Positions 1,355 through 62,354 of a DNA stretch of 64,000 nt are shown here, one piece after another. A program made the position numbers and the translations under genes. How positions within the stretch are numbered: the stretch's first letter is position 1; the number at the start of each line of letters is the position of its first letter. The notes below the pieces were generated by a model that saw only the letters and a list, made by a program, of their open reading frames with translations, did not search any database and was not told the origin of the DNA. The DNA lies in NCBI GenBank assembly GCA_002269645.1, contig NIVC01003683.1, positions 1 through 64,000 of the forward strand. Direction: 5' to 3'. Source of the DNA: Macrostomum lignano (Eukaryota).

Positions 1355-3367
1355 TCAAGTCTGCCTCTTGAACCACCGGTAGGCAACCACGTTGTCCATA
1401 CTCACGGTCTGAAATGCGATACACGGGTCTACCTCTGACTCTTTAAGTTAAGAGTTGAGATATGGGATTCGAGCTCGGGACCTAGGATTCGAATTCAAGA
1501 AATGAGATTCGAGCCCAGGACCACTGATTCAAATTCAAGAAATGAGATTCGAGCCCAGGACCACTGATTCAAACTCAACAAATGCGGTTCTAGCTCAGGA
1601 CCACTGATTCGAACTCAAGAAATGAGATTCGAGCCCAGGACCACTGATTTGAACTCAAGAATGAGATTCGAGCCCATGACCACCGATTCGAATTCAAGAA
1701 ATGAGATTCGAGCCCATGACCACCGATTCGAATTCAATAAATGAGATTCGAGCCCATGACCACTGATTCGAATTCAAGAAATGAGATTCGAGCCCAGGAC
1801 CACTGATTCGAATTCAAGAAATGAGATTCGAGCCCAGGACCACTGATATTCGAATTCAAGAAATGAGATTCGAACTCAGGACCATGGATTCGAATTCAAG
1901 AAATGAGATTCGAGCCCAGGACCATGGATTCGAATTCAAGAAATGAGATTCGAGCCCAGGACCACTAATATTAGAATTCAAGAAATGAGATTCGAACTCA
2001 GGACTACTGATTCGAGCTCAATATGATCTTAAGTTATTCAGTGATTTAGAAAGCCCGCACGAACCACCAGCATTTCTCCGTTGGGCTCCAAGCTTCGAAC
2101 AGTTTTCATTCCAGTAGTCTTCAAGTCGCCGCCAGCGCCCACGTCGGCCTGGTAAACGACGAGTTTTCCATCATCGGTCCACTCGGTGTAGTACTCCACC
2201 TGCTTGCCCGCCATCGCCATGTCGCCCTGCACCAGGGTGTCAAGCTCGTGCACCTGCTCCATGTTGAACATCATCGTCTTGGAGCTGATGCTAATCCGGC
2301 GATCGTCCAGTCGAGTCATCGTCACGGTTGGCGTGGCGTTGGCGCCCATCTTTCGGGCCATCCACGGGGCGCCTGCATGACATTGGGGATCGGCTTGAAT
2401 CGGCTGTCTGCCTTAAGTTGGTCTGTCTACCTGTGTCTGATCCAGCCTGCCTCAGTCTGCGTCATTCTGTGTCTGCGTCATTCTGTGTCTGCGTCATTCT
2501 GTTTCTGCGTCATTCTGTGTCTGCGTCATTCTGTGTCTGCGTCATTCTGTGTCTGCGTCATTCTGTTTCTGCGTCATTCTGTTTCTGCGTCATTCTGTGT
2601 CTGCGTCATTCTGTGTCTGCCTCATTCTGTGTCTGCCTCATTCTGTGTCTGCCTCATTCTGTGTCTGCCTCATTCTGTGTCTGCCTCATTCTGTGTCTGC
2701 CTCATTCTGTGTCTGCCTCATTCTGTGTCTGCCTCATTCTGTGTCTGCCTCATTCTGTGTCTGCCTCATTCTGTGTCTGCCTCATTCTGTGTCTGCCTCA
2801 TTCTGTGTCTGCCTCATTCTGTGTCTGCCTCATTCTGTGTCTGCCTCATTCTGTGTCTGCCTCATTCTGTGTCTGCCTCATTCTGTGTCTGCCTCATTCT
2901 GTGTCTGCCTCATTCTGTGTCTGCCTCATTCTGTGTCTGCCTCATTCTGTGTCTGCCTCATTCTGTGTCTGCCTCATTCTGTGTCTGCCTCATTCTGTGT
3001 CTGCCTCATTCTGTGTCTGCCTCATTCTGTGTCTGCCTCATTCTGTGTCTGCCTCATTCTGTGTCTGCCTCATTCTGTGTCTGCCTCATTCTGTGTCTGC
3101 CTCATTCTGTGTCTGCCTCATTCTGTGTCTGCCTCATTCTGTGTCTGTCTCAGCCTGTGTCTGCCTCATTCTGTGTCTGCCTCATTCTGTGTCTGCCTCA
3201 TTCTGTGTCTGCCTCATTCTGTGTCTGTCTCAGCCTGTGTCTGCCTCAGCTCATAACCCAGCCTCCACCGCCTTACCCGCTTTCTCCATCAGCGCTGCCA
3301 TATTCTCGCTCTTGTAGGCCTTCCACACGCCGAATAGCTGAGGATTCTCTTTGCCAGCAACTGCCAT
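1355..3367 (-). CDS. Fatty-acid-binding protein (FABP/iLBP family), copy 1, about 150 aa. Exons 3367-3277, 2372-2065, 1408-1355
   Basis: Spliced product MAVAGKENPQLFGVWKAYKSENMAALMEKAG|APWMARKMGANATPTVT...EPNGEMLV|TVSMDNVVAYRWFKRQT*. FABP hallmarks GxW, 'RKMG...P.V' and terminal 'R.F'. GT-AG introns in phase 1 and phase 0, matching conserved FABP introns 1 and 3. Confidence 0.9.
1470..2025. repeat. 40-bp minisatellite (GATTCGAATTCAAGAAATGAGATTCGAGCCCAGGACCACT) filling FABP-1 intron 2
   Basis: About 13 visible tandem units. Confidence 0.95.
2452..3245. repeat. 16-bp minisatellite (CTGTGTCTGCCTCATT) filling FABP-1 intron 1
   Basis: Near-perfect tandem array occupying most of the 2373-3276 intron. 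Confidence 0.97.
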
Positions 3368-5455: not shown

Positions 5456-7479
5456 GATGAAAATGCAAATTATTTATAAACTAGTCGAGGATTTACGCTC
5501 GCAAGAAGGCAGACAAAATCTTTCGGGCGGTAAAAGAAAAATAAAGAAATGCAACAGCAAGAGTTCAGTTGCTAAGCGACTTTCACGAATTCTTATACAT
5601 TGACAATACCCGTTTATTATCTCTTAAATTCTGGCCTGCTTGTTATCTTTTTCATGTTAAAAGTCTGGATATGGAGGACTGCAAATGCAAACGTACATGT
5701 ACGAATGTAACAGTAAATGATTTCATGCTGAAAAAGCTCACCAGACAGTCCACAGAATTTAGTCAAATGAAGTTACAGTGAAAAAGCAAGTGAAACCTCT
5801 CTTATCGCTCTTGTGGCATGCTCTAAACAGCTTAATTTCAAACATGCCGCACTAAAAGCGATTGCCAAAATGTGACTGAAATTAAATTAATAGTTAATAG
5901 AAAATTTTAATAGAATATTTATGACCCAAATAGGATGTCAAGTGCGACTCTTGTAATTTTCTTGCCCTCACGCGGTGAGCATGGTATATGTACTATCACA
6001 TACAGCATTTTCATAGGACCAGGCTTTCCACTGATTTTATTCACGATAATGCGACGCCAAATGACGGCATGCGCAGATAATCTATCTAATTTTTTTTAAT
6101 TTTAAATTAAAAAAAAATTGGGTATACCCTTTTTTAATTTGGAAGTCGGCAGGGGCAAAACTGTAACCATTTTTATTTATTTAAAACCTTCAGTTTTCGT
6201 ACCATCTTAAACCTCGAAAGCGAGTTTACTCTGGATCTATCTAATGATCTTGTACTTGTACTACGAGTACTATTAATACTACGGCTAGGCTCTAGCTACC
6301 TACGATTAAAGTTTCTACTGGTATAGGCCTATTCATTCTGTTTATTTAATTTATTAAGTCTTAAGTATTATCTGTTTAATGTATACGAATAATTAACTTT
6401 GCAACCATGCTTCAAAAACTTGCCTCTGTTCCAGTTTCAGTCTCGATTTATCAATTATATTATTAAATCTAGTGTCTTACATGATTACATGCGCATGTCT
6501 TACATGCGCAACAGTCGGCCGAGTCGGCCGATCCGGCCGACCGACCTAAGTAGGCCTAGTAGTACTAAGTAGCTGACGAGGCATTTTTAGTTAATAAGAC
6601 AGTCATAGTTACTCCTGCCGTTTACCCAAAGTTGCGTTAATTTTGCTTTAGGGTTTTTTACATGCAAGTCGCATTTTTGGCCAAAAACTACGTCGCATTT
6701 TTGTTAAAACTAAATCGCATGGCCGACCGAATTTTGGAGGTTGTGCATGTAATGGTCTTACTTAAAATCATCAACTTATTAATTTCAATTGCAATAGATT
6801 CCAATTTGTAAAATAGCCTAGAATTGTATTTTGAAATTGCTAGGCCTATCAGATTCAAAGTAATTTATTTCAGATTCAAACTGATTTATTTGCCATAGGC
6901 ATAGTCAATAGTGGCTTATTATTTGATTGCTTAGCTCTGGCTGCTCTGCCTGTGAGCCAAGTCCTTTTTGAGGTCTACTTAATTTATTAAGACTTGCTTA
7001 TATACTTATAGGCCTATCATAAAAATACCAAAAATACCAAATCTTTGTGATGCATATAAATCAACATGTATGATGCATATATTGATATAAGTCAAATATT
7101 TTAGGCCTAAAATAAATTTACAAGTATTATTATTCTACTAAGTTTAGACCTTTTAGGCCCTATTTTGTTTTGTCTTTATACTTCTTAGCATTTCAAGAAA
7201 GTAGGCCAGGCTAGGCTAAGCATGAGTCTCTGTTGCAGCTAGGCCTAGGAAGTTTTTTGCAAATGGCAATGGTAGTCCAGTGAAATAAAAAATAGTTGGT
7301 GTATCAGCTAGGCCTAAGCCTAATGGTTAAATATTTAGGCCCTATATTATAGCAAAGAAAAAGCTAACTTTGAAAACTTGCATATATTCTAAAATGATTT
7401 CAAATTTAGTCTAATATACTTTTTTTGTCCTTAGAGAACCATCTTGTACAATTTGACCTTTATTTATATTAGGCTTATA

Positions 7480-8782
7480 CGAGGATCACTCTGAAAGTTT
7501 TTGCGTTCGACCACTTTCAGCTTTCGCCAGAGCTCAACCCCCTCACATCTGTTCAAAGTAGTTGCCCTGCGTGGACACACACTTTCGCATTTGCTCAAAC
7601 CACTGCTCAAAGGCCGCAGCCCAGTCCTGTTTTGTCAGTGCATCCACACCGTCCCTGTACGCACAAATTGCGTCCTCAACTGTGGGAAATCTCTGTCCAC
7701 GAAGCCCAGCCTTCACCTTCGGAAACAGAAAAAAATCACACGGAGCCAGGTCGGGCGAGTAGGGCGGGTGTCCGACCACGGAAACATGATTTTTGGCCAA
7801 GAATGTGATGGTTCGCTGCGCCGTGTGTGAACTCGCGTTGTCGTGGTGCAGGCGAAGGCCGCGGATTCCACGTTTGGGACGCCGCTCCTGCCACGCCTGC
7901 AGCACCTGCGGCAGGCAGACTGTGACGTACCACTCCGCCGTCACTGTTCGCTGCCCATCCAGCACCACAGTCGCCATGTGGCCTGATCTGCCGAAGAAGC
8001 TGGCAAACATGGCTTTGCCGACGCTCCTGGAGCGGCAAACCTTCGTTGGTGACTCCTCACCAAAGAAGCACCACACTGACGACTGGCGCTTCGTCTCGGG
8101 GTCGTCCTGGAACACCCAGGTTTCGTCGCCCATCACGATGTCAAAAACACCATGTGCGGCGCTATCCTGGAAGTCAGCAAGCATCTGGCGGCACCACCGC
8201 ACGCATTCATCCTTCTGCTGCTGCGTCAGCAAATGTGGCACCCAATGAGCGCACAGTCGCTGTACGCCAAGGTGTTCGTGCAAAATCTTCTGCACTTGCC
8301 CGGATCCAATGCCCAGCTGCTGCTCCAATTGCACGTGGGTCACATGCCGATCCTCTTCGATCAGGCTGCAGCTCGACGTTTTCTCTAGTCGTTGCTGTCG
8401 CAGGACGTCCTTCTCGGTCGTCGTCGTCCAGGCTGCACCATCCAGCCCGAAGGTCGCGGTACCAGTTCTAGATGGTGTGGATCGAAGGCGCAGAATCTCC
8501 CAGAGCTGCCTGCATCTCCTCGTGGCATTGCTGCGTCGTGAGGCCGCGCTTGAAGTTGTAGAAAATTATGGTGCGGATGTCGCGCCTCGACAGTTCGGCG
8601 GCCATGGCTGGCAGGCGGCTGAAAACTGAATTTCAATTGCAGATTGCGTTGCTTCTTTTAAAGCTGGGCACTTGAATTTTTATATGCAAGTTGAAAACTT
8701 CTGGAATTAAGGTTTGGTGCAATTTTACGGCGCTGGCTTGCGGGGAAGTGGTCGAATGCAAAAACTTTTGGAGTTACCCTTG
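7480..8782 (-). mobile_element. Full-length mariner (DD34D) DNA transposon, 1303 bp, with disrupted transposase
   Basis: TA at 7478-79 and 8783-84. 33-bp imperfect TIRs (27/33 identical). Transposase from ATG 8605 with WVPHLLT, GDETW, HHDNASSH and YSPDLAPCD (34 residues between D2 and D3). In-frame TAG at 8470-8468 and a frameshift near 8365. Confidence 0.95.
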
Positions 8783-9596
8783 TAGGCATAGGAAAAATAT
8801 ATTATTAAAAATTTCAAGCCACAGCCAAAAAATCAAAGACATTTAAGACAAGTTAGGCCTAATTATAGTAGGTCTTTTGGCCTTTTTATAATATTTTAAA
8901 TTTGGATTTTCATAATTAATGCTAAAATATTGTGCTTTAGTTGATATTGTTTAGAATTCTTTTTGATAAAATTTAATTATTTAACAATGTTAAATAAATA
9001 TTTTATAATTATATGAATTTTTATTATAAAAAATATTTTTTGTTGTCTTTAATAATATAGTTTATATAAAGTAATTATTGATATTTTAGCTAGTTAATTA
9101 GTAGTTAATCATTTGAGGTATAACATAAAATAACAACATGAAATTAAGCTTTTTTGCTTAATTTTAAAAATTAAAAAAGTGCCAAAATTTTGACTTAAAA
9201 ACCTACACTAGACATAAGGCCTATATTTATATAAAAATTCTTAAATAATATCTTAATTCTTGTCTATTTGAAGTGATAATATAAAATAAGACTTGTTTAT
9301 ATAAGTAAGGCTGAGAAGAAATTTAGGATAATTAAAGTAGATGAAAGATACCTTTATTATAATGCCTTGTATTGTCTATTCATTGTTCTTTTTTCTTTCT
9401 TATGATATACCTTTTGATATCCTTATATAGTCTAGGTATATATAGTTAATTTTTGTAAGCTAATTATATAGGAGTAATCAGCTCTTTTAGGGGCCTTGTG
9501 ATCTTGTTTATTACTTCTGAAAAGAAATTAGATACAACAGAAATAGTAAAAAAAATGTTGGGAAAATATCATTAAATTAGTTCATTTTCTATGCTA

Positions 9597-10818
9597 TTTG
9601 TTTATTAAGAATGTTCTCATGGCAAAATTTGATCCTAAAACTTTCTAGAGCATTCTAGAAGCTAATTATATAGCTATATATATTGAGGGCAAATATAGGC
9701 TGTCTTGAGACTACTTTTTATGATTGTTGCTATCTTAGCCAGATCAACTATATAGATTTTTTTGACTTTATATTTATGGCCCATTACTCTATGACTTCAA
9801 ATTTAGCACCAAAGTAGGCTGGCATATTAACAGTGCATTTGGTGCTAATATTGTGTTTGAACACATTACACAAGATTGGTTTGCTTAGTTTTGCCAGTGA
9901 GATTTTAGCCTCAAAGATTTGCCCTAGTCAAGACATCCTGAGGTGGATGATGACTATTTGCACACACTCATTGAGGCTGACCCCTAACAAACCACATGAA
10001 TTGATGCAAGTTATTAGGGTAGGTAGACCATCAAACAATTGCTACTCATTTGTATCAACAAATCAACTAGGCAAGGTACACAAGTTGACTCAATGGACTG
10101 TACCCCATGAATTGTCCAATTGGGACTAGGAATGCAAGGCAAAGATGGCCACTTCTCTTCTTTCCTATTGGTGCACACAACTGGCTAAAGTTGATTATTA
10201 TAGGCAATAAAAAATGGTGTTTATAATATGAACATCAAGTGTTGCTAGTCATGGGTGGATGCTGATGCAACCCTTGAGCCATATCCTAAGGCCAAACTCT
10301 ATCCGCATGGTCATGCTGTGTGTTTAGTAGGACTGTAATAAAGGTGTGATCCTCTATGAGCTGCTACCACCCAATACATTGATTATGGCCAATCTATACT
10401 ACTAATAGCTAGATAGATTGGCTGCTACTATTGCATAGAAGCAACCAAATCATGGCCTGGTCCAATCTGTGCACAATAATGCTCATCCCCACACTGCCAA
10501 AGTGACTTGCCAAAAGTTACTGGGCCTTAGATGGGAACTGGTGCTTCATCCTCCATATCCCCCCTCCCCCAACTTGGCCCTAACCAATGCCTTGACAAGC
10601 AAAACTTTTGCTAATAAAAAAGCCTTGGATAACTAGCTCAACAAATTTTTTGCCTTGTAACCTAAGAAATTCTACACGGATAGCATTATGTCTCAGCCTA
10701 AAAAATGACAGGGTGATTGATTCAGATAGCAATTAACTTTTTTCCTAAAGTCCTTCCATTTAAAAAAAACTCTTGGAAGAAGGTTCTAGGAACTGTAAGA
10801 ACATTCTTAACAACCAAA
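9597..10818 (+). mobile_element. Heavily mutated full-length mariner, 1222 bp
   Basis: Inverted ends TA|TTTGTTTATTAAGAATGTTCT and AGAACATTCTTAACAACCAAA|TA. Remnant transposase motifs read in order: DWF, P*SRHP (PRSGRP), VPHEL, GNKKW (GDEKW), MLCV**D (WWD), HNNAHPH (HDNARPH), HPPY and SPNLA (SPDLA). Confidence 0.9.
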
Positions 10819-11769
10819 TATTTTGTTGATCAATTTTTCATTTGAATTAAATTTAATATAGTATGCAATAGCTTATAAAGAATATCTAGTACTTGTCAAT
10901 ATTCTATAAACAATCCCTATCAAAGATGCCAATTATATTATATGCTCTTATCAGTATTAAGCATCAGTCCATTATTAAATATTTACCTCCTAATTTTTTA
11001 TTAACATTATCAGACTGATATTAAGATTTTTACCCAATTTGCATTAATAATTTTTTGAATCAATGACAAATTCATCATTAATGTTAAAGACAATGCTAAT
11101 GAGACCAAAGCTGCAAAGAATGAACAAAAATATGTCTGACAAGAAATAAAAGTTATTTTTTTGCTTTATTTACTTTTAGTAATATTTTATTAAATATACA
11201 AGTTTTTACTTTTTTAGCTCAAATTGCTTGGATGACCTCTCTGTGTTGGCTAAAATGATAGAAAAGCAGAGGCATTTGCATTATAAAGTCTGTTTTGGAA
11301 AAGTGCAAAATTCTTATACTTTGTGTTAATACTACCAGATTACTGCTTACTAATGATTATCAGTTAACTTTTAATCAACTTAACAAATTAAGAATTAATA
11401 AGTTAAGATTTTTTGTTTTACTTTTGCTATTAATGGAAGTTAAGATTTTCATTAATGGTGACCAAAAATGGTTCTTATGTAAGTTAGCAATGAAATACCA
11501 GTTATTACTTTGAATAATAATGTTTATATCAAAGGCTCTATATAGTATTATTTTATCTTATTGATCTTAATTTATCATAGTATTATATTGAACAATAAAG
11601 CAAATATATGGTACAGTATATGATATATGATATATCTATACATTAATTATATAAGGTTAAGCATGTATTAATTGTGCTTAGGAGTTAAGAATATTTATCT
11701 CTAAATCATAAATTGATATTCTACATCCCATATATTGAATCAAACCTAGCTTCTGTAGTTTACAAGCTA

Positions 11770-12250
11770 TGCTCTGCAGACACATTGCCCCTGAGCTACT
11801 CATACTCAGCCCTCTGCAGACACATTGCTCCTGAGCTACTCATACTCAGCCCTCTGCAGACACATTGCCCCTGAGCTACTCATACTCAGCCCTCTGCAGA
11901 CACATTGCACTGAGCTACTCATACTCAGCCCTCTGCAGACACATTGCCCCTGAGCTACTCATACTCAGCCCTCTGCAGACACATTGCTCCTGAGCTACTC
12001 ATACTCAGCCCTCTGCAGACACATTGCCACTGAGCTACTCATACTCAGCCCTCTGCAGACACATTGCTCCTGAGCTACTCATACTCAGCCCTCTGCAGAC
12101 ACATTGCTCCTGAGCTACTCATACTCAGCCCTCTGCAGACACATTGCTCCTGAGCTACTCATACTCAGCCCTCTGCAGACACATTGCCCCTGAGCTACTC
12201 ATACTCAGCCCTCTGCAGACACATTGCCCCTGAGCTACTCATACTTAGCC
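11770..12250. repeat. 40-bp minisatellite (CCTCTGCAGACACATTGCYCCTGAGCTACTCATACTCAGC), about 12 copies, just upstream of the TONSL-like ORF
   Basis: Directly visible tandem units. Confidence 0.95.
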
Positions 12251-12268
12251 CTGTCTGCTGCATTGCAG

Positions 12269-12858
12269 AGCCGGTCAGCAGCCATAAGCGAGCGCGAACT
12301 GCACCGTCTGTTCGAACGGGCGCGGCGTTGCTATGTGCTGGGCAAATATGACGAGGCGACCAACTTAGCCGAGTCCGTCCTGGCCGATTGGCCCAACGAC
12401 AAGAACAGCATTGATGGCGTCACGCTGCTTGAACTGCGCAGATTTCTAGCCGACGCCTACATCGACTATGGCGAAGATAAAGCCGCCGAGGAGCACGCTT
12501 TGAAGTACGTTGAACTGGCCAGCGCTTCGGACAATAACAAGGTGCAGCAGGAGGCCTGGCTGACCCTCGGCCGTGTCTACCTGATGCTTGACTACGATGA
12601 CCCCAACTTTGGCAAGGCTAAGAAGGCCGTGTGCGCCAGCTTGAAGTGTCTGGCTAAGATGAGGAAGCAGCTGCGACCGCAGGACTTCAATATTATGAAG
12701 CTGGTTACCTATGTGAACTTGGTTAAGACCTGCAGGCCTAACGAGGTTTGTCACTGGCTGCGCGTTTTCACTAGGGGGCCTCTCTGGTGTCTGTTTGATG
12801 CGTGCCTGTCCGTCAGGAGTCTGTATTCAATTGACTTTTGTGTGTCCGTTTCTATACT

Positions 12859-12928
<70 letters not shown>

Positions 12929-12929
12929 G

Positions 12930-12982
<53 letters not shown>

Positions 12983-12997
12983 TTCTGTCTGTCTGTG

Positions 12998-13086
<89 letters not shown>

Positions 13087-16000
13087 GTCTGTCTGTCTAT
13101 CTGTCTTGGTGTATGTTTGTCTGTCTGTCTATCTGTCTTGGTGTATGTTTGTCTGTCTGTCTATCTGTCTTGGTGTATGTTTGTCTGTCTGTCTATCTGT
13201 CTTGGTGTATGTTTGTCTGTCTGTCTGTCTGTCTTGGTGTATGTTTGTCTGTCTTAGTGTCTGTCTGTCTGTCAGTGTCGTCTGATTTAAATCTCTCTGC
13301 CTTAACTACCTGTTTTTTACTGCCGTGATCTTGTCCTGGTAGCTGGTAGCTCGAGCCGAATTCCTGTCCGTATGCGACCGGTTGGTGGACCAGCTCGGCC
13401 GGGACGTGTCCGAGGAGACCCTGCTGGTGCACTGCGGCTCCAAGCTCGAGCACTACGTGGCCACCGAAGCCGTGGCCGACGGTTTCGAATTTGCTCGGAC
13501 AATGTCCGACCGGAAACTGCTGGACTTGTCGGCCGATGCCGCCCTGTACCTGAGCCTGTGCCGGTTGGCCGCGGTGGCCGCCGACAGCGGACAGCCGGGC
13601 CCCGTCAAGCAGCTGAGCCGGGCGAGTCTGTCCGTGTTCGCCCAGCGGGGCCTCCGTCAGCAGTCGCGCCTGCCGCGTGTGCAGCATCAGTCGGTTGTTC
13701 GACTGTTAAAGTGCAACCGGCTGCTGGCCAAGCTCGATTCGACTGGATCTGGCGCGGCCAGCGATGCCGGCCAGTTGAACGCCGAGACTGTCGGGGCTCA
13801 CCGGACAGCCGGGGACATCCTGCTGAGATTCCAGCTGCACGCCAGGGCTTCCGCGCACTTCGTCTGGCTGGTGAGAGGGGGGCTGTCGCTCAATAATCTT
13901 AATAATGATGGCCAATGTAAATCCTTCATCTAGAGCAGGGCTGCTTCTCTCTCCGGCCCTCGGGTCCTTTGAAACTTCACAATAGCAATCCGGCCCGCTC
14001 AAGGTTTGTGTCTCTTCCCAGATCCCCTGCTCCCTTCTACAATCTCCTCTCTCCTCTCCCTTCTCTACCTTCTCTCCTCTCCTCTCCGTCTGTCTGTTAA
14101 CGATAATAGTCCGTCATCAACTAACTAAAGTTATAGATAATGTCTATTAATTTATAATCGATAATAAATAATCTGCTGATTGCTTCATTTGTGGCCTCTG
14201 TCTGGCAGGTTGAGCAGCTCAAAGTGGATAAGCAGCGCTACTGTAAGGAACTGGCTTCAGCTTATGGCAGTTTGGCCGTCTGCTGCAGGGCCCTGGATCG
14301 CAAAGAGCAGGCCAATGAGTGCGATAGGGAAAAGCAGCTGCTGGAGGTGAGTTGGTGCCTGGATATGCTTACTGGTGAGGGTAGGGAGCGGATCATCTGG
14401 GTAGTGAGAGTAGGGAGCGGATTACCCCTTGGTAGTGAGAGTAGGGAGCGGATCATCTGGGTAGTGAGAGTAGGGAGCGGATCATCTGGGTAGTGAGAGT
14501 AGGGAGCGGATCATCTGGGTAGTGAGAGTAGGGAGCGGATTACCCCTTGGTAGTGAGAGTAGGGAGCGGATCATCTGGGTAGTGAGAGTAGGGAGCGGAT
14601 CATCTGGGTAGTGAGAGTAGGGAGCGGATCATCTGGGTAGTGAGAGTAGGGAGCGGATCATCTGGGTAGTGAGAGTAGGGAGCGGATTACCCCTGGGTAG
14701 TGAGAGTAGGGAGCGGATCATCTGGGTAGTGAGAGTAGGGAGCGGATCACCATCTAGGTAGTGGGGTGTAGGGAGCGGATCACCCTTTGGTAGTGAGGGT
14801 AGGGAGCGGGTCACCCCTTGGTAGTGAGGGTAGGGAGCGGGTCACCCCTTGGTAGTGAGGGTAGGGAGCGGATCGCAACCCGGGTAGTCAGTGTAGGGAG
14901 CGGATCGCAACCTGGGTAGTGAGGGTAGGGAGCGGATCGCAAACGGGATAGTGAGGGTAGGGAGCGGATCATCTGGGTAGTGAGAGTAGGGAGCGGATCA
15001 TCTGGGTAGTGAGAGTAGGGAGCGGATCATCTGGGTAGTGAGAGTAGGGAGCGGATCATCTGGGTAGTGAGAGTAGGGAGCGGATCATCTGGGTAGTGAG
15101 AGTAGGGAGCGGATCATCTGGGTAGTGAGAGTAGGGAGCGGATCATCTGGGTAGTGAGAGTAGGGAGCGGATTACCCCTGGGTAGTGAGAGTAGGGAGCG
15201 GATCATCTGGGTAGTGAGAGTAGGGAGCGGATCACCATCTAGGTAGTGGGGTGTAGGGAGCGGATCACCCTTTGGTAGTGAGGGTAGGGAGCGGGTCACC
15301 CCTTGGTAGTGAGGGTAGGGAGCGGGTCACCCCTTGGTAGTGAGGGTAGGGAGCGGATCGCAACCCGGGTAGTGAGTGTAGGGAGCGGATCGCAACCTGG
15401 GTAGTGAGGGTAGGGAGCGGATCGCAAACGGGATAGTGAGGGTAGGGAGCGGATCGCAAACTGGGTAGTGAGGAAAGGGAGCAGATCCGCATCTGAGTAG
15501 AGAGGGTAGAGAGCGGATCCCATCCTGACCCAATTGTCACAATAACCCCAAGCTAGTCTCCAATCTGATAACTTTATAATTTTCTAACGTCCAAGGGCTC
15601 GCCAGAAGGCAATGAGGAAGGCGACAAGGCCAACCGCAAGAAAGAGAGCGGCAAAGAAGAAAAAGACGGGAGCGATGATGAGAGCAGCAACAGCAACAGC
15701 AGTGACAACGATGAGGACGCAGATGGCGACGGCTGGACGGATGTGAGCAGCGGTATTACCTCGGGCATGTCCGATTTCCAAGTTGGCAACGAGGGTCGGC
15801 AGCCTCGCAGCCGCAATAGTCGGCCTATGGAGGCGCGGAAGAACGAATTCGGCGATACGCCTTTGCACCTGGCCGCGCAGAGGGGCGATATTAATCGGTG
15901 AGTAGGCTGGGTGAGCTCTTAAGTGCTGTCCATCCTGAGTGAGGTGTCAGTCCCACATGAGTGAGCAGTCAGTCCCTCCTGATTGAGGTGTCAGTCCCAC

Positions 16001-19000
16001 CTGAGCAAGCTGTCAATGCCTCACCTGAGCAAGCTGTCAATGCCTCACCTGAGCAAGCTGTCAATGCCTCACCTGAGCAAGCTGTCAATGCCTCACCTGA
16101 GCAAGCTGTCAATGCCTCACCTGAGCAAGCTGTCAATGCCTCACCTGAGCAAGCTGTCAATGCCTCACCTGAGCAAGCTGTCAATGCCCCACCTGAGCAA
16201 GCTGTCAATGCCTCACCTGAGCAAGCTGTCAATGCCTCACCTGAGCAAGCTGTCAATGCCTCACCTGAGCAAGCTGTCAATGCCTCACCTGAGCAAGCTG
16301 TCAATGCCTCACCTGAGCAAGCTGTCAATGCCTCACCTGAGCAAGCTGTCAATGCCTCACCTGAGCAAGCTGTCAATGCCTCACCTGAGCAAGCTGTCAA
16401 TGCCTCACCTGAGCAAGCTGTCAATGCCTCACCTGAGCAAGCTGTCAATGCCTCACCTGAGCAAGCTGTCAATGCCTCACCTGAGCAAGCTGTCAATGCC
16501 TCACCTGAGCAAGCTGTCAATGCCTCACCTGAGCAAGCTGTCAATGCCTCACCTGAGCAAGCTGTCAATGCCTCACCTGAGCAAGCTGTCAATGCCTCAC
16601 CTGAGCAAGCTGTCAATGCCTCACCTGAGCAAGCTGTCAATGCCTCACCTGAGCAAGCTGTCAATGCCTCACCTGAGCAAGCTGTCAATGCCTCACCTGA
16701 GCAAGCTGTCAATGCCTCACCTGAGCAAGCTGTCAATGCCTCACCTGAGCAAGCTGTCAATCACCCGCAGAGCCCGTCAGCTGGTGGAGGTGCACGGCCA
16801 TTCAGTCAGCGTAGTTGACAACAACAATTGGCAGCCAGTTCACGACGCAGCCACCCACGGTCACATCAACGTGATTGAATACCTGCTCGAACGCGGTGTA
16901 CCAGTCGACACGCCCGGTTGCCGCGGTTCCACCGCCCTGCTAGAGGCGGTGAGCTCCGGGCACTTCGAAGCGGCCAAATGGCTGATAGAGAGAGGCGCCA
17001 ATCCGGCCAGACGCGACGCTGACGGGGACAATATCCTCAGCCTGGCCGAGGCCTGGCGTCACGACTGCGTGGCCGACGGACAGCTCGCTGCCAGCCTGAC
17101 TGCGAACCGGTTCCGGCACTGGCTGGCCGACAGGCTGGGCGAGGTGGAGTTTCAACGGCTGGAGAAGCAGTACGAAGCTGCTCAGGCCAGGCTGAAGCTG
17201 CGCCTGGCTGCTCAGGAGGCCAGAGCCGGCGGCAAGAGCAAAGATCGCAGAGGCGACAAGGATGAGAACAAAGATCGGGACGGTGATAGGCGAGCCGGAG
17301 TGGAGAGCTATAAGGCCACGATGCGGCAGGTAGGCTAAACCTTTTCGTGTTGATTTTGTAGCTTGTCCGATGTCTGAGTAGTGAGTACTGGCTGGCACAG
17401 ATACTATAACAACTAGATGGGCCACTCAGCACATTTGCGTGTAAGCTACTTTCAGTAGAAAACTATAAATAGTAGCCTCGGGGGTTTAGCCGGTACTTTT
17501 ACCCTTGGTTAAAGCGTCGGACTCAGGACTAGAAGGTCCACTCGGAACAATTTGTGTCCTAAAATAAAGGCTGCTGACATAACTGATAAATTTAGAAGCC
17601 CAAGCTTGAAGGCGTAAACAACTTGCTAATTGGTTCAGCAATAATGTACATTAGTCAGTCACCTGACATGGGCAGCTTTAGGCTGGAATTCCGAAAAGGC
17701 AATAAAAATTGGGGCGGGGCGGGGGGGGGGTAGTGTTGGAAAGGTTCCGTTGGAGGGTTTAAGCCAAGGGGTAAGAGCCAATAAATGAGCCTTGACTTTA
17801 AAATACATTAAAATGCTTCTGTTAAAATTACTACTGAACTGAAAGTAGTTTACACGCAAATGCGCTGAGTGGCCCATCTAGTTATTCTCGTATCTGTGAG
17901 TTCACCCAGCTGTAAAATGGGTGCCAGCATTAGCCTGGGTAATTAACTTTACTGTCCCGAGCACATTTAACGGACCTTCTACTTCCCCTTCGACCCCATA
18001 TGTTCCTCGGTGCAGCTGCCATGCTGTACATCTTCAGTGGCTCACTGGCTAATGTACAATACATGACGCCTTATTTCCATAATAGTAGCTTATCGCATTC
18101 TTCCTTGCTACTAAACTGAAAGTAGTAGATCTAGTAAACAGTTGAATAAACCTAGTTTAAGCAGCAACCGTATCGTTGACAATTTCAGGTCAGGCGTAGC
18201 GCGGTTCGCGACCGGCGCCACGCGCCAAAACCGGCGCCGCAAGAGTTGGAAAGCCCGTACGCTTCTGACGCGTCAAATGATGGGCAGATGGAGCCCGATG
18301 CCGGCGAGGACAGCGAGGACAGCAGCGAAGGCCCAGCCAAGCGGCCCCGGCTGCAGTTGAAGCAGCAGAGCAGCGGCAATCGGCGCAGGCCCATGCAGAT
18401 TCTGGACGACGATGACATTGATGAAGAAGTCAGAGAACAAGAAAAAGGCCAGAAGAAGACTCCCATCTGTCTGTCTCCTCCGCCAGTGTCGGCGCCGTCA
18501 GCGCACGCGCCCGCCGCGGAGTCGGAGGACTGCAACAGTCCGGTGTTCAATCGTTCAGCGGTTGCTATGGACAGAACTGCTCAGCATCGCCGCGGACTGG
18601 CAGACGCGTCAATCTTGCCTTTTGCTGTTGACCAATTCCAGCAGCACGACCAACCGGTGCCGCTGCTCAACTCCACCATGCTGATGCCAGCCCCAGCCGC
18701 CACGGTCACCAGTCCCGACACTGCACCGTCTGCCGCCGATCCTCGCATTGCTCGCTGCCTACGCGACGCTCAGACGGCCGGCTGCCTGACCGCCGCCGAT
18801 TTCCGTCTTGGCCCGGACGGCGCCTTGCCGCTGCTGACCTGCCGGCCGGACCGGCTGACCCGTCTGGATCTGTCCGGCAATCTGCTCACCGACCTGCCAT
18901 CGCCAGCTCTGGCCAGCCTAGTCGCTTGGCAAGGCTCGGCCAGTCTGTCCGACTTGAATCTGGCCGGCAATGACTTAACTTCGGCTACTCTGTCCGAACT

Positions 19001-19487
19001 GCCGGCTATGCCGTCTCTGCGCGTACTTGATTTGTCCGAGAATCCTCTTGGCGACTCGGCCGGGCCGCATATTGGCCGACTGGTGTCCGGCTCGCCTAAA
19101 CTGGATTGGCTGCTGCTGAGAGACTGCCGTCTGACTGACAAGTTCGGCCGGCCTGGCCTGCTAAGCTCGGACAGTGTCCGACTATTGGATCTGGACGGGA
19201 ATCTGTTTAGCGACAACGGTGTCTCATTGTTAATTGATTGCGTCATCAATTGGCGCCAGTTAGATACTCTACGGCTGCGCCGGTGTCAGGTTGCCTTAGC
19301 AACTAAATATAGCAACGCGGCTGCCGTGTCTTCGGCTGCTACTGGCGGATGTTTGGCGGCCAGCCTGGCTCGCCTGCTGCAGCGGCCGGGTAGCAGCCTG
19401 CGAGTGTTGGACCTGCGCGAGAACGGCTTGAAGCCGGGAGAGTTTGCCGCGGCGGCCGAGCTTATTGCCACTCTGCTTGTGTCTTGA
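12269..19487 (+). CDS. TONSL: Tonsoku-like DNA repair protein (TPR - ankyrin - LRR), about 1100 aa. Exons 12269-12745, 13343-13870, 14209-14346, 15596-15897, 16771-17329, 18189-19487
   Basis: N-terminal ERELHRL and KYVELA...QEAWLTLGR resemble TONSL ERELRQL and QYLELA...QRAWATIGR. Ankyrins KNEFGDTPLH, DNNNWQPVHDAATHGH and EAVSSGHFE. C-terminal LRRs (LDLSENPLGD). Splice phases 0,0,0,2,0 join into one frame. No ATG found in the first exon. Confidence 0.85.
12863..13275. repeat. (TCTG)n microsatellite in TONSL intron 1
   Basis: Directly visible. Confidence 0.97.
14375..15510. repeat. About 29-bp G-rich minisatellite (GGGTAGTGAGAGTAGGGAGCGGATCATCT) filling TONSL intron 3
   Basis: Tandem units. 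A variant block recurs at 485-bp spacing (identical ORFs at 14629 and 15114). Confidence 0.95.
15998..16760. repeat. 24-bp minisatellite (CACCTGAGCAAGCTGTCAATGCCT), about 32 near-identical copies, filling TONSL intron 4
   Basis: Directly visible; only one internal variant unit noticed. Confidence 0.97.
17411..17883. mobile_element. MITE-like element with about 46-bp terminal inverted repeats in TONSL intron 5
   Basis: AACTAGATGGGCCACTCAGCACATTTGCGTGTAAGCTACTTTCAGT at 17411 and its reverse complement (2 mismatches) ending at 17883. No TSD identified. Confidence 0.65.
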
Positions 19488-19879
19488 TTGATTTATGCAT
19501 TCTAACTGCGCTACCGCTAGTAGCTATATAAGCATTTTATTATTGCTTTTTTGTCTGCTAAAGTATGAATTTCTTTATCTGATCATAAGTGACAAACCAA
19601 GTGAGAATATATTTATATGTAACTACACGCCATTCTCTTAAATGCGCCCATCTACTCTTCTTAGTAGCAAAATAACATATTATTAGAATTTACAAGACTT
19701 TGGAAGTTTTTAATGCGGCAACAATCCGCCTTTGGCTCCGACTCCAGACTGTTTTTTAAAAAAACAAATGAATGACTGAAAATTGCAGGAAAATTGGAAC
19801 CTAAATCCAGTGCGTGTGTGCATAGCGAGCAAGAGAGAAGAGGGGTGGCGCCCAGCCCCCAGACAGGCCGATAAACAGT

Positions 19880-20205
19880 TTGGCTTTTCTCTTGCCCGCT
19901 TGTGTCTGACTCTGACCTCCCTCCTTGCTGCTCTCATTGGTTGAGCCAGATTGGGGCTTCCCCCCAAGGCTGGTTTTGTCTGTCTGACTAACCTCTCTCC
20001 TTACTGCTCTCTAATTGGCTGAGCCAGATTGGGCCTGCTCCCCCTAGGGCTGGTTTTGTCTGCCTGACTTTAACCTCTCTCCTTACTGCTCTCTCATTGG
20101 CTGAGCTAGATTGGGTCTGCCCCCCCCCCAAGGCTGGTTTTGTCTGTCTGACTTTATAACCTCTCCTTACTGCTCTCTCTCATTGGCTGAGCTAGATCGG
20201 GCCTG
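19880..20205. repeat. About 80-bp tandem repeat, about 4 copies, containing ATTGG motifs
   Basis: Recurring GGCTGGTTTTGTCTG...CTCTCATTGGCTGAGC[CT]AGATTGGG. Confidence 0.8.
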
Positions 20206-28344: not shown

Positions 28345-29815
28345 AGATAGCTAACTAGTAGATATTCACCTTTCATGTAGCTAATTAGTCAATATTCAGG
28401 TAGCTAACTAGCCAATATTCAAGTAGCTAGTTAGCCAATATTCAGGTAGCTAATTAGCCAATATTCAGGTAGCTAATTAGTCAATATTCAGGTAGTTAAT
28501 TATTCAATATTCAGGTAGCTAATTATTCAATATTCAGGTAGCTAATTATTCAATATTCAGGTAGCTAATTATTCAATATTCAGGTAGCTCACTAGTCAAT
28601 ATTCAGGTAGCTAATTAGCCAATATTCAGGTAGCTAATTAGTCAATATTCAGGTAGTTAATTATTCAATATTCAGGTAGCTAATTATTCAATATTCAGGT
28701 AGCTAATTATTCAATATTCAGGTAGCTCACTAGTCAATATTCAGGTAGCTAATTATTCAATATTCAGGAAGCTAATTAGCCAATACTCAGGTAGCTAATT
28801 AGCCAATATTCAGGCAGCTAATTAGTCAATATTTAGGTAGCTAATTAGCCAATATTCAGGCAGCTAATTAGTCAATATTTAGGTAGCTAATTAGCCAATA
28901 TTCAGGTAGCTAATTAGCCAATATTCAGGTAGCTAATTAGCCAATATTCAGGTAGCTAATTAGCCAATATTCAGGTAGCTAACTAGTCAATATTCAGGTA
29001 GCTAATTATTCAATATTCAGGTAGCTAATTATTCAATATTCAGGTAGCTAATTATTCAATATTCAGGTAGCTCACTAGTCAATATTCAGGTAGCTAATTA
29101 TTCAATATTCAGGTAGCTCACTAGTCAATATTCAGGTAGCTAATTAGCCAATATTCAGGTAGCTAATTAGTCAATATTCAGGTAGTTAATTATTCAATAT
29201 TCAGGTAGCTAATTATTCAATATTCAGGTAGCTAATTATTCAATATTCAGGTAGCTCACTAGTCAATATTCAGGTAGCTAATTATTCAATATTCAGGAAG
29301 CTAATTAGCCAATACTCAGGTAGCTAATTAGCCAATATTCAGGCAGCTAATTAGTCAATATTTAGGTAGCTAATTAGCCAATATTCAGGCAGCTAATTAG
29401 TCAATATTTAGGTAGCTAATTAGCCAATATTCAGGTAGCTAATTAGCCAATATTCAGGTAGCTAATTAGCCAATATTCAGGTAGCTAATTAGCCAATATT
29501 CAGGTAGCTAACTAGTCAATATTCAGGTAGCTAATTATTCAATATTCAGGTAGCTAATTATTCAATATTCAGGTAGCTAATTATTCAATATTCAGGTAGC
29601 TCACTAGTCAATATTCAGGTAGCTAATTATTCAATATTCAGGTAGCTAATTATTCAATATTCAGGTAGCTAACTAGTCAATATTCAGGTAGCTAATTATT
29701 CAATATTCAGGTAGCTAACTAGTTAATATTCAGGTAGCTAATTAGTCAACATTCAGGTAGCTAATTAGTTAATATTCAGGTAGCTAATTAGCCAATACTC
29801 AGGTAGCTAATTATT
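28345..29815. repeat. 23-bp minisatellite (AATATTCAGGTAGCTAATTAGCC) with a higher-order duplication
   Basis: About 60 units. The rare variant TATTCAGGAAGC recurs at 28761 and 29290. Confidence 0.95.
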
Positions 29816-31772: not shown

Positions 31773-31829
31773 CTGCAAGGCAACGGGGGTCGGCACGGAG
31801 CTTAAATCTCTAGATTTATCCTCTAATAG

Positions 31830-32052
31830 GAGGGTATGGGATTATCCTCTAATAGATAAGGGGAAGCGGATTATCCTTTCTAATAGACAGGGGGCAGCGG
31901 ATTATCCTCTAATAGACAAGGGGCAGCGGATTATCCTCTAATAGACAGGGGGCAGCGGATTATCCTCTAATAGACAAGGGAGCAGCGGATTATCCTCTAA
32001 TAGACAAGGGAGCAGCGGATTATCCTCTAATAGACAAGGGGAAGCGGATTAT
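31830..32052. repeat. 30-bp minisatellite (GGATTATCCTCTAATAGACAAGGGAGCAGC) upstream of the receptor main exon
   Basis: About 7 visible units. Confidence 0.93.
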
Positions 32053-34580: not shown

Positions 34581-34974
34581 CAAAGATCTAAACACAATTG
34601 GACACAGCTTTCGCCTCTGAAATATTTTACAAGGCACACTCAAAAACATCAACATTATAAAGTGAGACGATAGACAGCGAGGCGCCCCGACCAGAGTATG
34701 AGTGAAATTTTATAGCCAGTCTTACACCACAGCTAGTAAAATTTTAGCACTTAAACGACTGTATCAAGAGCTACGATTCAACAGTTTTACAGACCACAAA
34801 AACAGAGTGTGGAGCAATTATAAGTTATTGCTTATAAGTTTCTTCCGTCATTTATAGTCTCACACTATTTCTTGAGTGTTTACTCGTCATCATAAAACAA
34901 GCTTTACTGCTTTTTATACACTCGCAAGCATTGCAGTACTGTCTGTTTGCTTGTTTTAGGCTGTTTACCTTCAG

Positions 34975-56105: not shown

Positions 56106-56129
56106 GTGACTAGCTGCTTCCCCTAAATA

Positions 56130-62170: not shown

Positions 62171-62354
62171 TGTCTAGTGGGGCTGCTCTGGAGCATTGGA
62201 AACGTTTTTTAGTGGCATTAGAACTTGTTCTACAATGAATAGTAGGTAGTCTCGCACTTTTACTATATCGCTTGTTTCTACCTTAAGCAGTCACCCAAAC
62301 TACTACCGTTATGATACAATATACATGTAGCTATACTAGATATTCTGCAGTCGT

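What the first reader, a model, noticed from the sequence alone, without database searches (positions are those of the whole stretch)
9597..10818. RIP-like CpA and CpG hypermutation of a mariner copy in an animal genome
Seen: this 1.2-kb element has only two CpGs by my count, and its changes from mariner consensus motifs are overwhelmingly C>T/G>A. Many fall outside CpG: WWD reads TAG TAG GAC (10325-10333), presumed YCQQL reads TAC TAC TAA TAG CTA, AQK reads GCA TAG AAG, and GDEKW reads GGC AAT AAA AAA TGG. Presumed Arg codons appear as TAG, implying CpG>TpG>TpA in two steps. Established: CpA>TpA is the signature of fungal repeat-induced point mutation, whereas ordinary animal methylation decay is CpG-centred. 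Inference: a repeat-targeted cytosine methylation/deamination system acting on CpA as well as CpG operates, or operated, in this lineage. The CpG-rich mariner only 800 bp away shows the process is copy- or age-specific. This is my best candidate for an undescribed system.
Basis: partly seen in the sequence, partly recalled or inferred. Interest (0 to 1): 0.85.

Follow-up and report, generated by a model that had tools for sequence, protein, structure and literature searches.

The report
Old mariner eroded by CpG methylation
A long-dead mariner transposon in what is almost certainly the flatworm Macrostomum lignano has lost its CpGs and a fifth of its other cytosines through slow, age-dependent C-to-T decay of the kind cytosine methylation causes, not through a fungal RIP-like system.

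Summary
Window 9597-10818 is a complete, dead mariner with TA duplications and 21/27 inverted ends. It has exactly 2 CpGs where 45 are expected, and the quoted codons are real.

Against an ancestor inferred from CpG-rich relatives, 147 of 186 substitutions are C>T/G>A, and 60% of those lie outside CpG. The RIP reading fails, for these reasons:
- **CpG dominates.** C>T at CpG runs 11-21 times faster than at other cytosines. CpA is only about 2 times CpC/CpT.
- **RIP indices are negative.** (CpA+TpG)/(ApC+GpT) rises from 1.32 to 1.62.
- **Decay is gradual.** Across 21 copies, CpG loss and non-CpG C>T track transversion age in a smooth gradient, from copies with intact ORFs to this one, the oldest.
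- **Young repeats are untouched.** Young multi-copy mariners keep their CpGs, including the neighbour at 7467-8782, which is absent from both paralogues.
- **Flanks are CpG-free too.** This includes flank DNA with no detectable dispersed copies.
- **The enzymes are ordinary.** The genome encodes DNMT1-, DNMT2- and DNMT3-like genes and SRA-domain genes. No extra methyltransferase class or APOBEC-type gene was found.

This is ordinary methyl-CpG decay plus AT-biased mutation. Two points remain mildly interesting: a CAG-biased non-CpG excess, and CpG hypermutability in transposon and AT-rich DNA but not in the adjacent GC-rich genes.

The parts
9597..10818 (+). Dead full-length mariner copy of subfamily A, the oldest and most decayed of the 21 copies compared. 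GC is 0.385, it has 2 CpGs, and every reading frame holds 19-35 stops.
9595..9596 (.). Left TA target-site duplication.
   Evidence: family alignment.
10819..10820 (.). Right TA target-site duplication.
9597..9623 (+). 5' terminal inverted repeat. It matches the 3' end at 21 of 27 positions. A 6-bp deletion relative to other family copies follows immediately after it.
10792..10818 (-). 3' terminal inverted repeat.
10304..10305 (.). Surviving ancestral CpG. It is also kept in paralogues L002 and L003.
10677..10678 (.). A newly created CpG. The ancestral CG became CA, and then a T>G change in the common ancestor of this copy and L002 made a new CG. L002 has already lost it to TG.
10325..10333 (+). 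WWD motif now reading TAG TAG GAC. Both changes are TpG>TpA, which is CpA>TpA on the other strand.
8783..12252 (.). AT-rich block that is virtually CpG-free (2 observed, 90.9 expected) and holds the element. It comprises a left flank with no detectable dispersed copies (GC 0.21), the element, a right flank (GC 0.24) carrying a high-copy dispersed repeat at about 11144-11473, and a 40-bp minisatellite at 11772-12252. The block is shared with two paralogous copies.
7467..8782 (-). Young, GC-rich (0.555) mariner of a different subfamily with normal CpG content (95 observed, 101 expected). It is a TA-targeted insertion absent from both paralogues. The genome holds at least 10 full-length copies at 94-96% identity.

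Best explanation
The element is a very old, dead copy of a mariner family that still has intact members in this genome. The genome is almost certainly Macrostomum lignano assembly Mlig_3_7.

After insertion at a TA site the copy evolved neutrally, inside DNA that appears to be CpG-methylated in the germline. Two ordinary processes eroded it:
1. Deamination of 5-methylcytosine at CpG, presumably laid down by the canonical DNMT3/DNMT1/UHRF1-type machinery. This destroyed essentially every ancestral CpG. Most became TpG or CpA, and some went on to TpA.
2. A strongly AT-biased background of C>T transitions at all other cytosines, in the order CpA > CpT >= CpC, with CAG the hottest context. This pulls the copy toward the 21-24% GC of its flanks.

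The insertion, with its flanks, was later duplicated twice. A young GC-rich mariner then landed 800 bp away in this copy only.

**Shown here:** the substitution spectrum, its dependence on age, the empty sites in the paralogues, the CpG-free flanks, and the presence of the methylation genes.

**Inferred:** that CpG hypermutability reflects germline 5mC at this locus, and that the CpA/CAG excess reflects either a side activity of DNMT3 or a plain sequence-context effect.
For: **Spectrum against the inferred ancestor** (1259 b, GC 0.507, 60 CpG):
- C>T per cytosine is 0.53 at CpG (59/111, saturated), 0.311 at CpA (51/164), 0.128 at CpC and 0.171 at CpT.
- T>C is 0.015-0.041 per site.
- There are 23 transversions.
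- The 60 ancestral CpGs now read 28 TG, 19 CA, 7 TA and 0 aligned CG.

**Rate ratio.** From unsaturated copies, CpG runs 11-21 times faster than non-CpG C>T (derived).

**Gradient across 21 copies**:
- CpG retention runs from 0.99 down to 0.00.
- Non-CpG C>T runs from 0.002 to 0.22.
- Both track transversion divergence, with Spearman -0.88 and 0.91.

**Replication.** All other decayed lineages show the same order of contexts. So does young subfamily B: CpG 0.667, CpA 0.181, CpC 0.090, CpT 0.081, T>C 0.023.

**Young families intact.**
- At least 6 subfamily B copies keep a 339-aa ORF, and subfamily B copies have CpG o/e 0.74-0.86.
- The neighbour family has at least 10 copies at 94-96% identity and CpG o/e near 1.

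**Composition**:
- CpA/TpG o/e is 1.32.
- (CpA+TpG)/(ApC+GpT) rises from 1.32 to 1.62.
- The composite RIP index stays at -0.73.

**Flanks.** They hold 0 CpG against 9.1 and 13.8 expected. The left flank matches only the paralogues.

**Ongoing and regional.**
- Flank duplicates show about 5-fold excess differences at CpG.
- The GC-rich genic paralogue comparison shows none: 3 differences at 526 CpG cytosines against 14 at 1832 others.

**Machinery.**
- DNMT1-like (E 5e-63), DNMT3-like (E 1.5e-16) and DNMT2-like genes are each present in three copies.
- SRA-domain genes are present.
- The literature reports that M. lignano retains DNMT1 and DNMT3 and has low adult 5mC (PMC11292947, PMC9246332, PMC10658182).

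**Species identity.** G000 has 764,410,778 b in 5269 contigs. Mlig_3_7 has 764,424,962 b in 5270 scaffolds (PMC5730564).
Against: - No methylation data were available, so 5mC at this locus and in the germline is inferred only from its mutational footprint. Published adult 5mC levels are described as low.
- The CpA (CAG) excess is real and is not explained by CpG methylation alone.
- The non-CpG C>T to T>C bias, about 5-7 to 1, is stronger than usual for animals.
- The ancestor was inferred from three CpG-rich lineages of the same family, so errors at some sites are possible.
- Subfamilies A and B share homologous sites, so they are not independent tests of extended sequence context.
- The genome search skips very common words, so calling the left flank unique is a soft statement.
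Confidence: 0.8

Rival explanations
1. This adds to the best explanation rather than replacing it. Transposon copies are targets of de novo DNMT3 methylation that also deposits weaker non-CpG methylation, mostly at CpA and especially CAG. Deamination of that mark would produce the roughly 2-fold CpA>TpA excess seen in the mariner copies.
For: - Contexts rank CpG >> CpA > CpT >= CpC in every decayed lineage and in young subfamily B.
- CAG is the hottest non-CpG context: 0.284 against 0.104 for CAA in subfamily A, and 0.259 against 0.106 in subfamily B. CAG exceeds its complement CTG.
- That ordering matches the known non-CpG preference of mammalian DNMT3 enzymes (background knowledge).
- A DNMT3-like gene is present.
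- No significant CpA excess appears in flank duplicates (1.2-fold) or in minisatellite variants. That would fit a transposon-specific effect.
Against: - The effect is only about 2-fold, within the range of plain sequence-context effects on mutation.
- Both supporting datasets come from one mariner family with shared sites.
- The flank and minisatellite datasets are small, and the first is unpolarised.
- There are no methylation data.
Confidence: 0.3
2. A RIP-like system triggered by repeats mutates duplicated DNA at CpA and CpG in bursts.
For: - There are many CpA>TpA changes, 51 in this copy.
- TpA/ApT rises from 0.58 to 0.89.
- The CpA excess over CpC+CpT is significant.
Against: - CpG, not CpA, is the dominant target.
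- (CpA+TpG)/(ApC+GpT) is 1.62 and rising. The composite RIP index is -0.73, unchanged from the ancestor.
- Decay is proportional to transversion age.
- Young families with 10-19 near-identical copies keep their CpGs and their ORFs.
- Duplicated GC-rich genes are untouched.
- All PF00145 hits fall into DNMT1-, DNMT2- or DNMT3-like groups, with none resembling RID or DIM-2.
Confidence: 0.03
3. An AID/APOBEC-type DNA deaminase edits the transposon copies.
For: The changes are strongly biased toward C>T with few transversions.
Against: - There is no 5'-T preference. TCA is the coldest CpA context at 0.131, against 0.254 for ACA.
- The dependence is on the 3' neighbour, with CpG far ahead.
- There is no strand asymmetry: 44/236 C>T against 55/223 G>A.
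- The genome gave no APOBEC_N or NAD1 hit. The NAD1 search had no positive control, so absence is not shown.
- Decay is gradual.
Confidence: 0.03
4. Methylation plays no part. An intrinsic AT-biased mutation spectrum with a CpG context effect, plus great age, explains the depletion.
For: - All cytosine contexts decay.
- The flanks sit at 21-24% GC.
- Adult 5mC is reported as low.
Against: - An 11-21-fold CpG effect that is present in transposon and AT-rich DNA but absent in adjacent GC-rich genic DNA is hard to obtain without a regional mark.
- DNMT1, DNMT3 and SRA-domain genes are retained in three copies each.
Confidence: 0.1

Closest known systems
Methyl-CpG deamination decay of dead transposon copies, as in Alu, L1 and mariner relics in vertebrate genomes
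   Same: - CpG>TpG/CpA dominates and affects both strands equally.
- CpA/TpG is enriched.
- Decay is proportional to copy age.
- Young copies are still CpG-rich.
- DNMT1, DNMT3 and SRA-domain genes are present.
   Different: - Depletion here is more complete, with o/e near 0.02-0.04 and kilobase runs without a single CpG.
- It sits in a mosaic next to GC-rich genes with normal CpG content and no CpG hypermutability.
- The accompanying non-CpG C>T bias is stronger, about 5-7 to 1 over T>C.
Repeat-induced point mutation (RIP) of Neurospora and other ascomycetes
   Same: - The changes are C>T/G>A transitions.
- Many CpA>TpA changes create stop codons.
- The end product is AT-rich.
   Different: - CpG, not CpA, is the main target.
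- CpA/TpG is not depleted.
- The RIP indices are negative.
- The process is not triggered by duplication and is gradual rather than a burst.
- No RID-like gene was found.
CpG-centred hypermutation of transposons in basidiomycete fungi (TpCpG-biased)
   Same: It is a CpG-centred C>T decay of repeats in a genome that has a DNMT1-type enzyme.
   Different: - This is an animal lineage.
- ACG (0.625) and TCG (0.60) are hit about equally, so there is no TCG-specific motif.
- Flank DNA without detectable dispersed copies is affected as well.
Non-CpG (CpA; CAG or CAC) methylation by DNMT3 enzymes in mammalian germ, stem and neuronal cells
   Same: - Contexts rank CpA > CpT > CpC.
- CAG is the hottest context and exceeds its complement CTG, so the effect is asymmetric.
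   Different: Only a 2-fold mutational footprint in one transposon family is seen here. No methylation was measured.
Mosaic invertebrate methylomes, with gene-body methylation and, in some species, transposon methylation
   Same: Segments with and without CpG hypermutability alternate along the sequence.
   Different: In this window the footprint lies on transposon and AT-rich intergenic DNA, not on the GC-rich ORFs. This is the opposite of the classic gene-body pattern. Only a few genes were sampled.

Membership tests
mariner (Tc1/mariner superfamily) DNA transposon | Transposase with the Mos1-type HTH and the DDE/D catalytic domain (D,D34D). | tested here: met
   - The remnant matches Transposase_1 at E 3.3e-5.
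- An intact subfamily B relative gives Transposase_1 at 2.8e-28 and HTH_48 at 2.1e-16.
- Its HDNARPH...SDYHLF spacing reads as D34D (read from the protein printed).
- In the window copy the HDN motif has become HNN and the third-D region is deleted.
mariner (Tc1/mariner superfamily) DNA transposon | Short terminal inverted repeats and a TA target-site duplication. | tested here: met
   The inverted repeats match at 21 of 27 positions, with TA on both sides.
Fungal-type RIP | C>T preferentially at CpA, with CpA/TpG depleted and TpA enriched. The usual thresholds are (CpA+TpG)/(ApC+GpT) below about 1.03, TpA/ApT above about 0.89, and a composite index above 0. | tested here: not met
   - CpG runs roughly 6-10 times faster than CpA, and CpA is only about 2 times CpC/CpT.
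- The substrate index is 1.62, up from 1.32.
- TpA/ApT is 0.89, at the borderline.
- The composite index is -0.73.
Fungal-type RIP | Triggered by sequence duplication, so that all sufficiently long and similar copies are hit, in bursts. | tested here: not met
   - Young families with 10-19 copies at 94-99.8% identity keep their CpGs and their ORFs.
- Decay scales with transversion age.
- Duplicated genes are unaffected.
Fungal-type RIP | Dependence on a RID or DIM-2 class C5-methyltransferase homologue. | tested here: not met
   All 12 PF00145 hits fall into three groups whose best matches to solved structures are DNMT1, DNMT2/TRDMT1 and DNMT3A. This is an exon-level six-frame search, so a divergent gene could have been missed.
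Methyl-CpG deamination decay | CpG lost to TpG and CpA on both strands at a rate far above that of other cytosines. | tested here: met
   - The 60 ancestral CpGs now read 28 TG, 19 CA, 7 TA and 0 CG.
- The rate is 11-21 times the non-CpG rate in unsaturated copies.
Methyl-CpG deamination decay | Maintenance and de novo CpG methyltransferases are encoded in the genome. | tested here: met
   DNMT1-like, DNMT3-like and SRA-domain genes are present. The literature agrees.
Methyl-CpG deamination decay | 5-methylcytosine is actually present on this class of DNA in the germline. | not testable with these tools
   No methylation data are held. Reviews cite only low 5mC in adults and say the pattern is unknown in free-living flatworms.
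AID/APOBEC editing | A 5'-neighbour motif (TpC or WRC), strand-coordinated clusters, and a deaminase gene. | tested here: not met
   - TCA is the coldest CpA context.
- The strands are symmetric.
- APOBEC_N and NAD1 gave no hits, though the NAD1 search lacked a positive control.

The most novel reading that the evidence does not exclude
M. lignano directs dense germline CpG methylation at transposons and AT-rich intergenic DNA rather than at gene bodies. Its DNMT3 also adds a weaker, CAG-biased non-CpG mark on transposon copies. Together these would act as a slow mutational inactivator of transposons: RIP-like in outcome, canonical in enzymology. This would be the first description of a methylation landscape for a free-living flatworm.
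Probability: 0.3. Interest if true: 0.55.

Novelty: new member of a known kind. Interest (0 to 1): 0.25.

Why it matters
The finding removes a candidate for a RIP-like system in animals. What looked like RIP is the end state of ordinary methyl-CpG decay plus AT-biased mutation.

A useful by-product is a sequence-only footprint of where germline methylation has acted in a flatworm whose methylome pattern is undescribed. [quoted passage not shown]
- Transposon copies and AT-rich intergenic DNA are CpG-hypermutable and end up virtually CpG-free.
- Neighbouring GC-rich ORFs are not CpG-hypermutable.

The modest CAG-biased non-CpG signal gives a concrete hypothesis to test with a methylome. If confirmed genome-wide, M. 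lignano would be an invertebrate with transposon- and intergenic-centred methylation rather than gene-body methylation.

Tried and rejected
- **Longer paralogous stretches.** I tried to fetch about 160 kb from C2930 and C873 to polarise recent mutations across the whole window. Only L071 and L072 were obtained, and L072 proved non-homologous.
- **Three-way polarised comparison.** Comparing L001, L002 and L003, flanks included, gave only 26 events, too few for context rates.
- **Unpolarised flank duplicates.** These gave a CpG excess of about 5-fold but a CpA excess of only 1.2-fold, which is not significant.
- **Minisatellite variants.** I used variants within 20 arrays of the window as an independent spectrum. 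The segmentation was crude, there were only 152 variants, and no AT bias appeared. CpA was 0.07 against 0.13-0.15 for CpC and CpT. I treat this as uninformative.
- **Second transposon family.** I looked among all held sequences for another multi-copy family to replicate the context analysis. Only the mariner is multi-copy there. Loci for the neighbour's family could not be cut out.
- **Primary paper.** The original M. lignano genome paper, which contains the bisulfite data, is not held.
- **Rejected readings:**
  - RIP.
  - APOBEC-type editing.
  - An assembly artefact, because the same decayed sequence is present in two further paralogous contigs.
  - Copy-specific targeting, because the flanks share the CpG-free state.

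Full report
**1. What is at 9597-10818**

The stretch is a complete but dead mariner. It is bounded by TA/TA, and its terminal inverted repeats match at 21 of 27 positions. Every reading frame carries 19-35 stops. The remnant protein still matches Pfam Transposase_1. It has exactly two CpGs, at 10304 and 10677. Base composition predicts 45.0, giving a Poisson probability of 3e-17, and the lowest count in 2000 shuffles was 27.

**2. Whose genome**

The window's assembly has 764,410,778 bases in 5269 contigs. The published Macrostomum lignano assembly Mlig_3_7 has 764,424,962 bases in 5270 scaffolds (PMC5730564). The difference is 14,184 bases in one scaffold, about the size of the separately assembled mitochondrial genome. 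That last point is my inference.

Other features fit that neopolyploid, repeat-rich flatworm:
- The window carries animal genes: an activin-receptor-type kinase, a Bcl-2-like protein, an alpha-kinase, and ankyrin and LRR proteins.
- Loci regularly occur in two or three copies.
- The window is packed with minisatellites.

Reviews state that M. lignano retains DNMT1 and DNMT3 and has low 5mC in adults. [quoted passage not shown]

**3. The family and a polarised comparison**

A genome search with the element gave at least 55 matches. Two of them, L002 at 97% and L003 at 90%, share the flanks. They are therefore segmental duplicates of one and the same insertion.

The other copies form two subfamilies:
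- **Subfamily A** contains the window copy. Its members range from CpG-rich (L031/L032 and L037: GC about 0.50, 58-59 CpGs) to CpG-poor.
- **Subfamily B** is young. Its 19 copies lie 0.2-6% from their consensus. At least six have an intact 339-aa transposase ORF, which gives Transposase_1 at 2.8e-28 plus HTH_48.

I inferred the subfamily A ancestor by a two-of-three vote among L031/32, L037 and the subfamily B consensus. It has 1259 positions, GC 0.507 and 60 CpGs.

**4. The substitution spectrum**

Against that ancestor the window copy has 147 C>T/G>A changes, 16 T>C/A>G changes and 23 transversions.

| Context | C>T events / sites | Rate per cytosine |
|---|---|---|
| CpG | 59/111 | 0.53 (saturated) |
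| CpA | 51/164 | 0.311 |
| CpC | 17/133 | 0.128 |
| CpT | 20/117 | 0.171 |

- The 60 ancestral CpGs now read 28 TG, 19 CA and 7 TA. None is an aligned CG.
One example is an Arg codon CGG now reading TAG.
- The CpG at 10304 is ancestral. The one at 10677 was newly created by a T>G change, and paralogue L002 has already lost it to TG.
- The CpA excess over CpC+CpT is significant. The odds ratio is 2.6 (p = 1e-4) and the rate ratio 2.10 (95% CI 1.46-3.17). Pooled over six lineages the ratio is 1.75 (1.43-2.12).
- The excess recurs in subfamily B: CpG 0.667, CpA 0.181, CpC 0.090, CpT 0.081, T>C 0.023.
- Among CpA contexts, CAG is the hottest. It is 0.284 against 0.104 for CAA in subfamily A, and 0.259 against 0.106 in subfamily B. 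CAG exceeds its complement CTG.
- There is no 5'-T preference. TCA is the coldest CpA context.
- There is no strand asymmetry.

**5. Why this is not RIP-like**

- **CpG is the main target.** In unsaturated copies the per-cytosine CpG rate is 11-21 times the mean non-CpG C>T rate. For example, L051 retains 60% of its CpGs with 1.2% non-CpG C>T, and L033 retains 10% with 9.2%.
- **The indices go the wrong way.** (CpA+TpG)/(ApC+GpT) rises from 1.32 in the ancestor to 1.62, because CpG decay feeds the CpA/TpG pool. The composite RIP index is -0.73 against -0.74 in the ancestor.
- **The decay is a continuum.** Across 21 copies, CpG retention falls from 0.99 to 0 and non-CpG C>T rises from 0.002 to 0.22. 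Both follow transversion divergence of 0-2.5%, with Spearman -0.88 and 0.91. The window copy is simply the oldest end member.
- **Being repeated does not trigger it.** Subfamily B keeps its CpGs and ORFs. So does the neighbour's family, with at least 10 full copies at 94-96% identity.
- **The neighbour is younger.** The CpG-rich mariner at 7467-8782 is a later TA-targeted insertion. Both paralogues have the empty site.
- **The depletion is regional.**
  - The block 8783-12252 has 2 CpGs against 90.9 expected.
  - The flanks have 0 against 9.1 and 13.8 expected.
  - The left flank matches only its paralogues in the genome.
  - The window contains 14 CpG-free runs of at least 600 bp.

**6. The machinery**

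- All 12 PF00145 hits fall into three groups of three copies each. Their best matches to solved structures are DNMT1 (5e-63), DNMT2/TRDMT1 (9e-25) and DNMT3A (1.5e-16).
- SRA-domain genes, as in UHRF1, are present in two groups of three.
- APOBEC_N and NAD1 gave no hits. The NAD1 search had no positive control, so absence is not shown.

**7. Regional specificity**

- In duplicated AT-rich flanks, transition differences per CpG cytosine are about 5 times those at other cytosines: 5.6% against 1.0-1.3%.
- In 4.4 kb of GC-rich genic DNA compared with its paralogue, CpG shows no excess: 3 differences at 526 CpG cytosines against 14 at 1832 others.
- This is the footprint of a regional mark on transposon and AT-rich DNA. 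It argues against a purely chemical CpG effect.
- Selection or biased gene conversion in genes cannot be excluded as a contributor.

**8. Residual oddities**

- The CpA/CAG excess appears in the mariner copies only. It is not significant in flank duplicates (1.2-fold) and is absent from the noisy minisatellite data.
- The excess could be a by-product of DNMT3 non-CpG activity on transposons, or an ordinary context effect.
- Subfamilies A and B share sites, so they are not independent tests. No second family was available.

**9. Verdict**

C>T dominates, the CpA excess is real, and the contrast with the neighbour is one of age. The process, however, is ordinary, gradual, CpG-centred decay in a genome with the canonical methylation genes. 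It is not an undescribed RIP-like system.

Noticed in passing
window 12253-14370 and 17560-20165, compared with L071 (C2930:104001-113700): The GC-rich genic DNA shows no CpG hypermutability between paralogues. There are 3 transition differences at 526 CpG cytosines against 14 at 1832 other cytosines, with 17 transitions and 21 transversions overall. Transposon copies and AT-rich flanks, in contrast, show a 5-21-fold CpG excess. This suggests mosaic germline methylation that spares these genes.
   Followed up: partly
window 7467-8782 (- strand): A young mariner of a different subfamily, GC-rich with CpG o/e about 0.94-0.98. It has a TA duplication and an empty site in both paralogues. The genome holds at least 10 full-length copies at 94-96% identity. 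In this copy the HTH and catalytic parts lie in different reading frames.
   Followed up: yes
loci L039-L047 (for example C104:279057-280301): Subfamily B of the same mariner has at least six copies with an intact 339-aa transposase ORF, canonical motifs and D34D spacing. The family was probably active recently.
   Followed up: partly
window 6838-7466, 8783-9052 and 9534-12252, compared with L002: Divergence from the paralogue is very uneven across one duplicated block: 88%, 92.7% and 98.5% identity. Window 9053-9533 is replaced by other sequence in L002. This points to gene conversion or a mosaic duplication history.
   Followed up: no
window 11772-12252: A 40-bp minisatellite with 12.1 copies at 97% match, shared with paralogue L002. 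It abuts a GC-rich ORF with weak TPR matches at 12194-13285.
   Followed up: no
window 11144-11473: A segment of a high-copy dispersed repeat, with 584 first-look candidates in the genome at about 76% identity, embedded in the CpG-free right flank.
   Followed up: no
whole window (for example 2455-3248, 15998-16761, 28372-29813, 34966-36309, 54408-56106): The density of minisatellite arrays is exceptional: 45 Tandem Repeats Finder rows at score 200 or above. Several arrays account for CpG-free runs at moderate GC because their repeat units contain no CG.
   Followed up: partly
window 6001-6730, and the left flank of L002: DNA that is AT-rich (GC about 0.35) yet has normal CpG content (o/e about 1.0). 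In L002 it carries repeated TTTCGGCGAAAG-like motifs. AT-richness alone therefore does not predict CpG depletion. This is probably a young repeat.
   Followed up: no
window 29952-31841 (-), 61475-62173 (-), 63253-63999 (+), 15983-17338 (+), 18180-19487 (+): Long uninterrupted GC-rich ORFs: an activin-receptor-type Ser/Thr kinase (629 aa), a Bcl-2-like protein, an alpha-kinase, an ankyrin-repeat protein with a 24-bp-repeat-encoded N-terminus, and an LRR protein. Their CpG o/e is 0.8-1.0.
   Followed up: no
mariner copies compared with the genic paralogue comparison: Non-CpG C>T runs about 5-7 times T>C in the transposon copies, and transitions far outnumber transversions there. In the GC-rich genic DNA transitions are about equal to transversions. 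Some force, either selection or biased gene conversion, must hold genes at 55-65% GC against this mutation bias.
   Followed up: no
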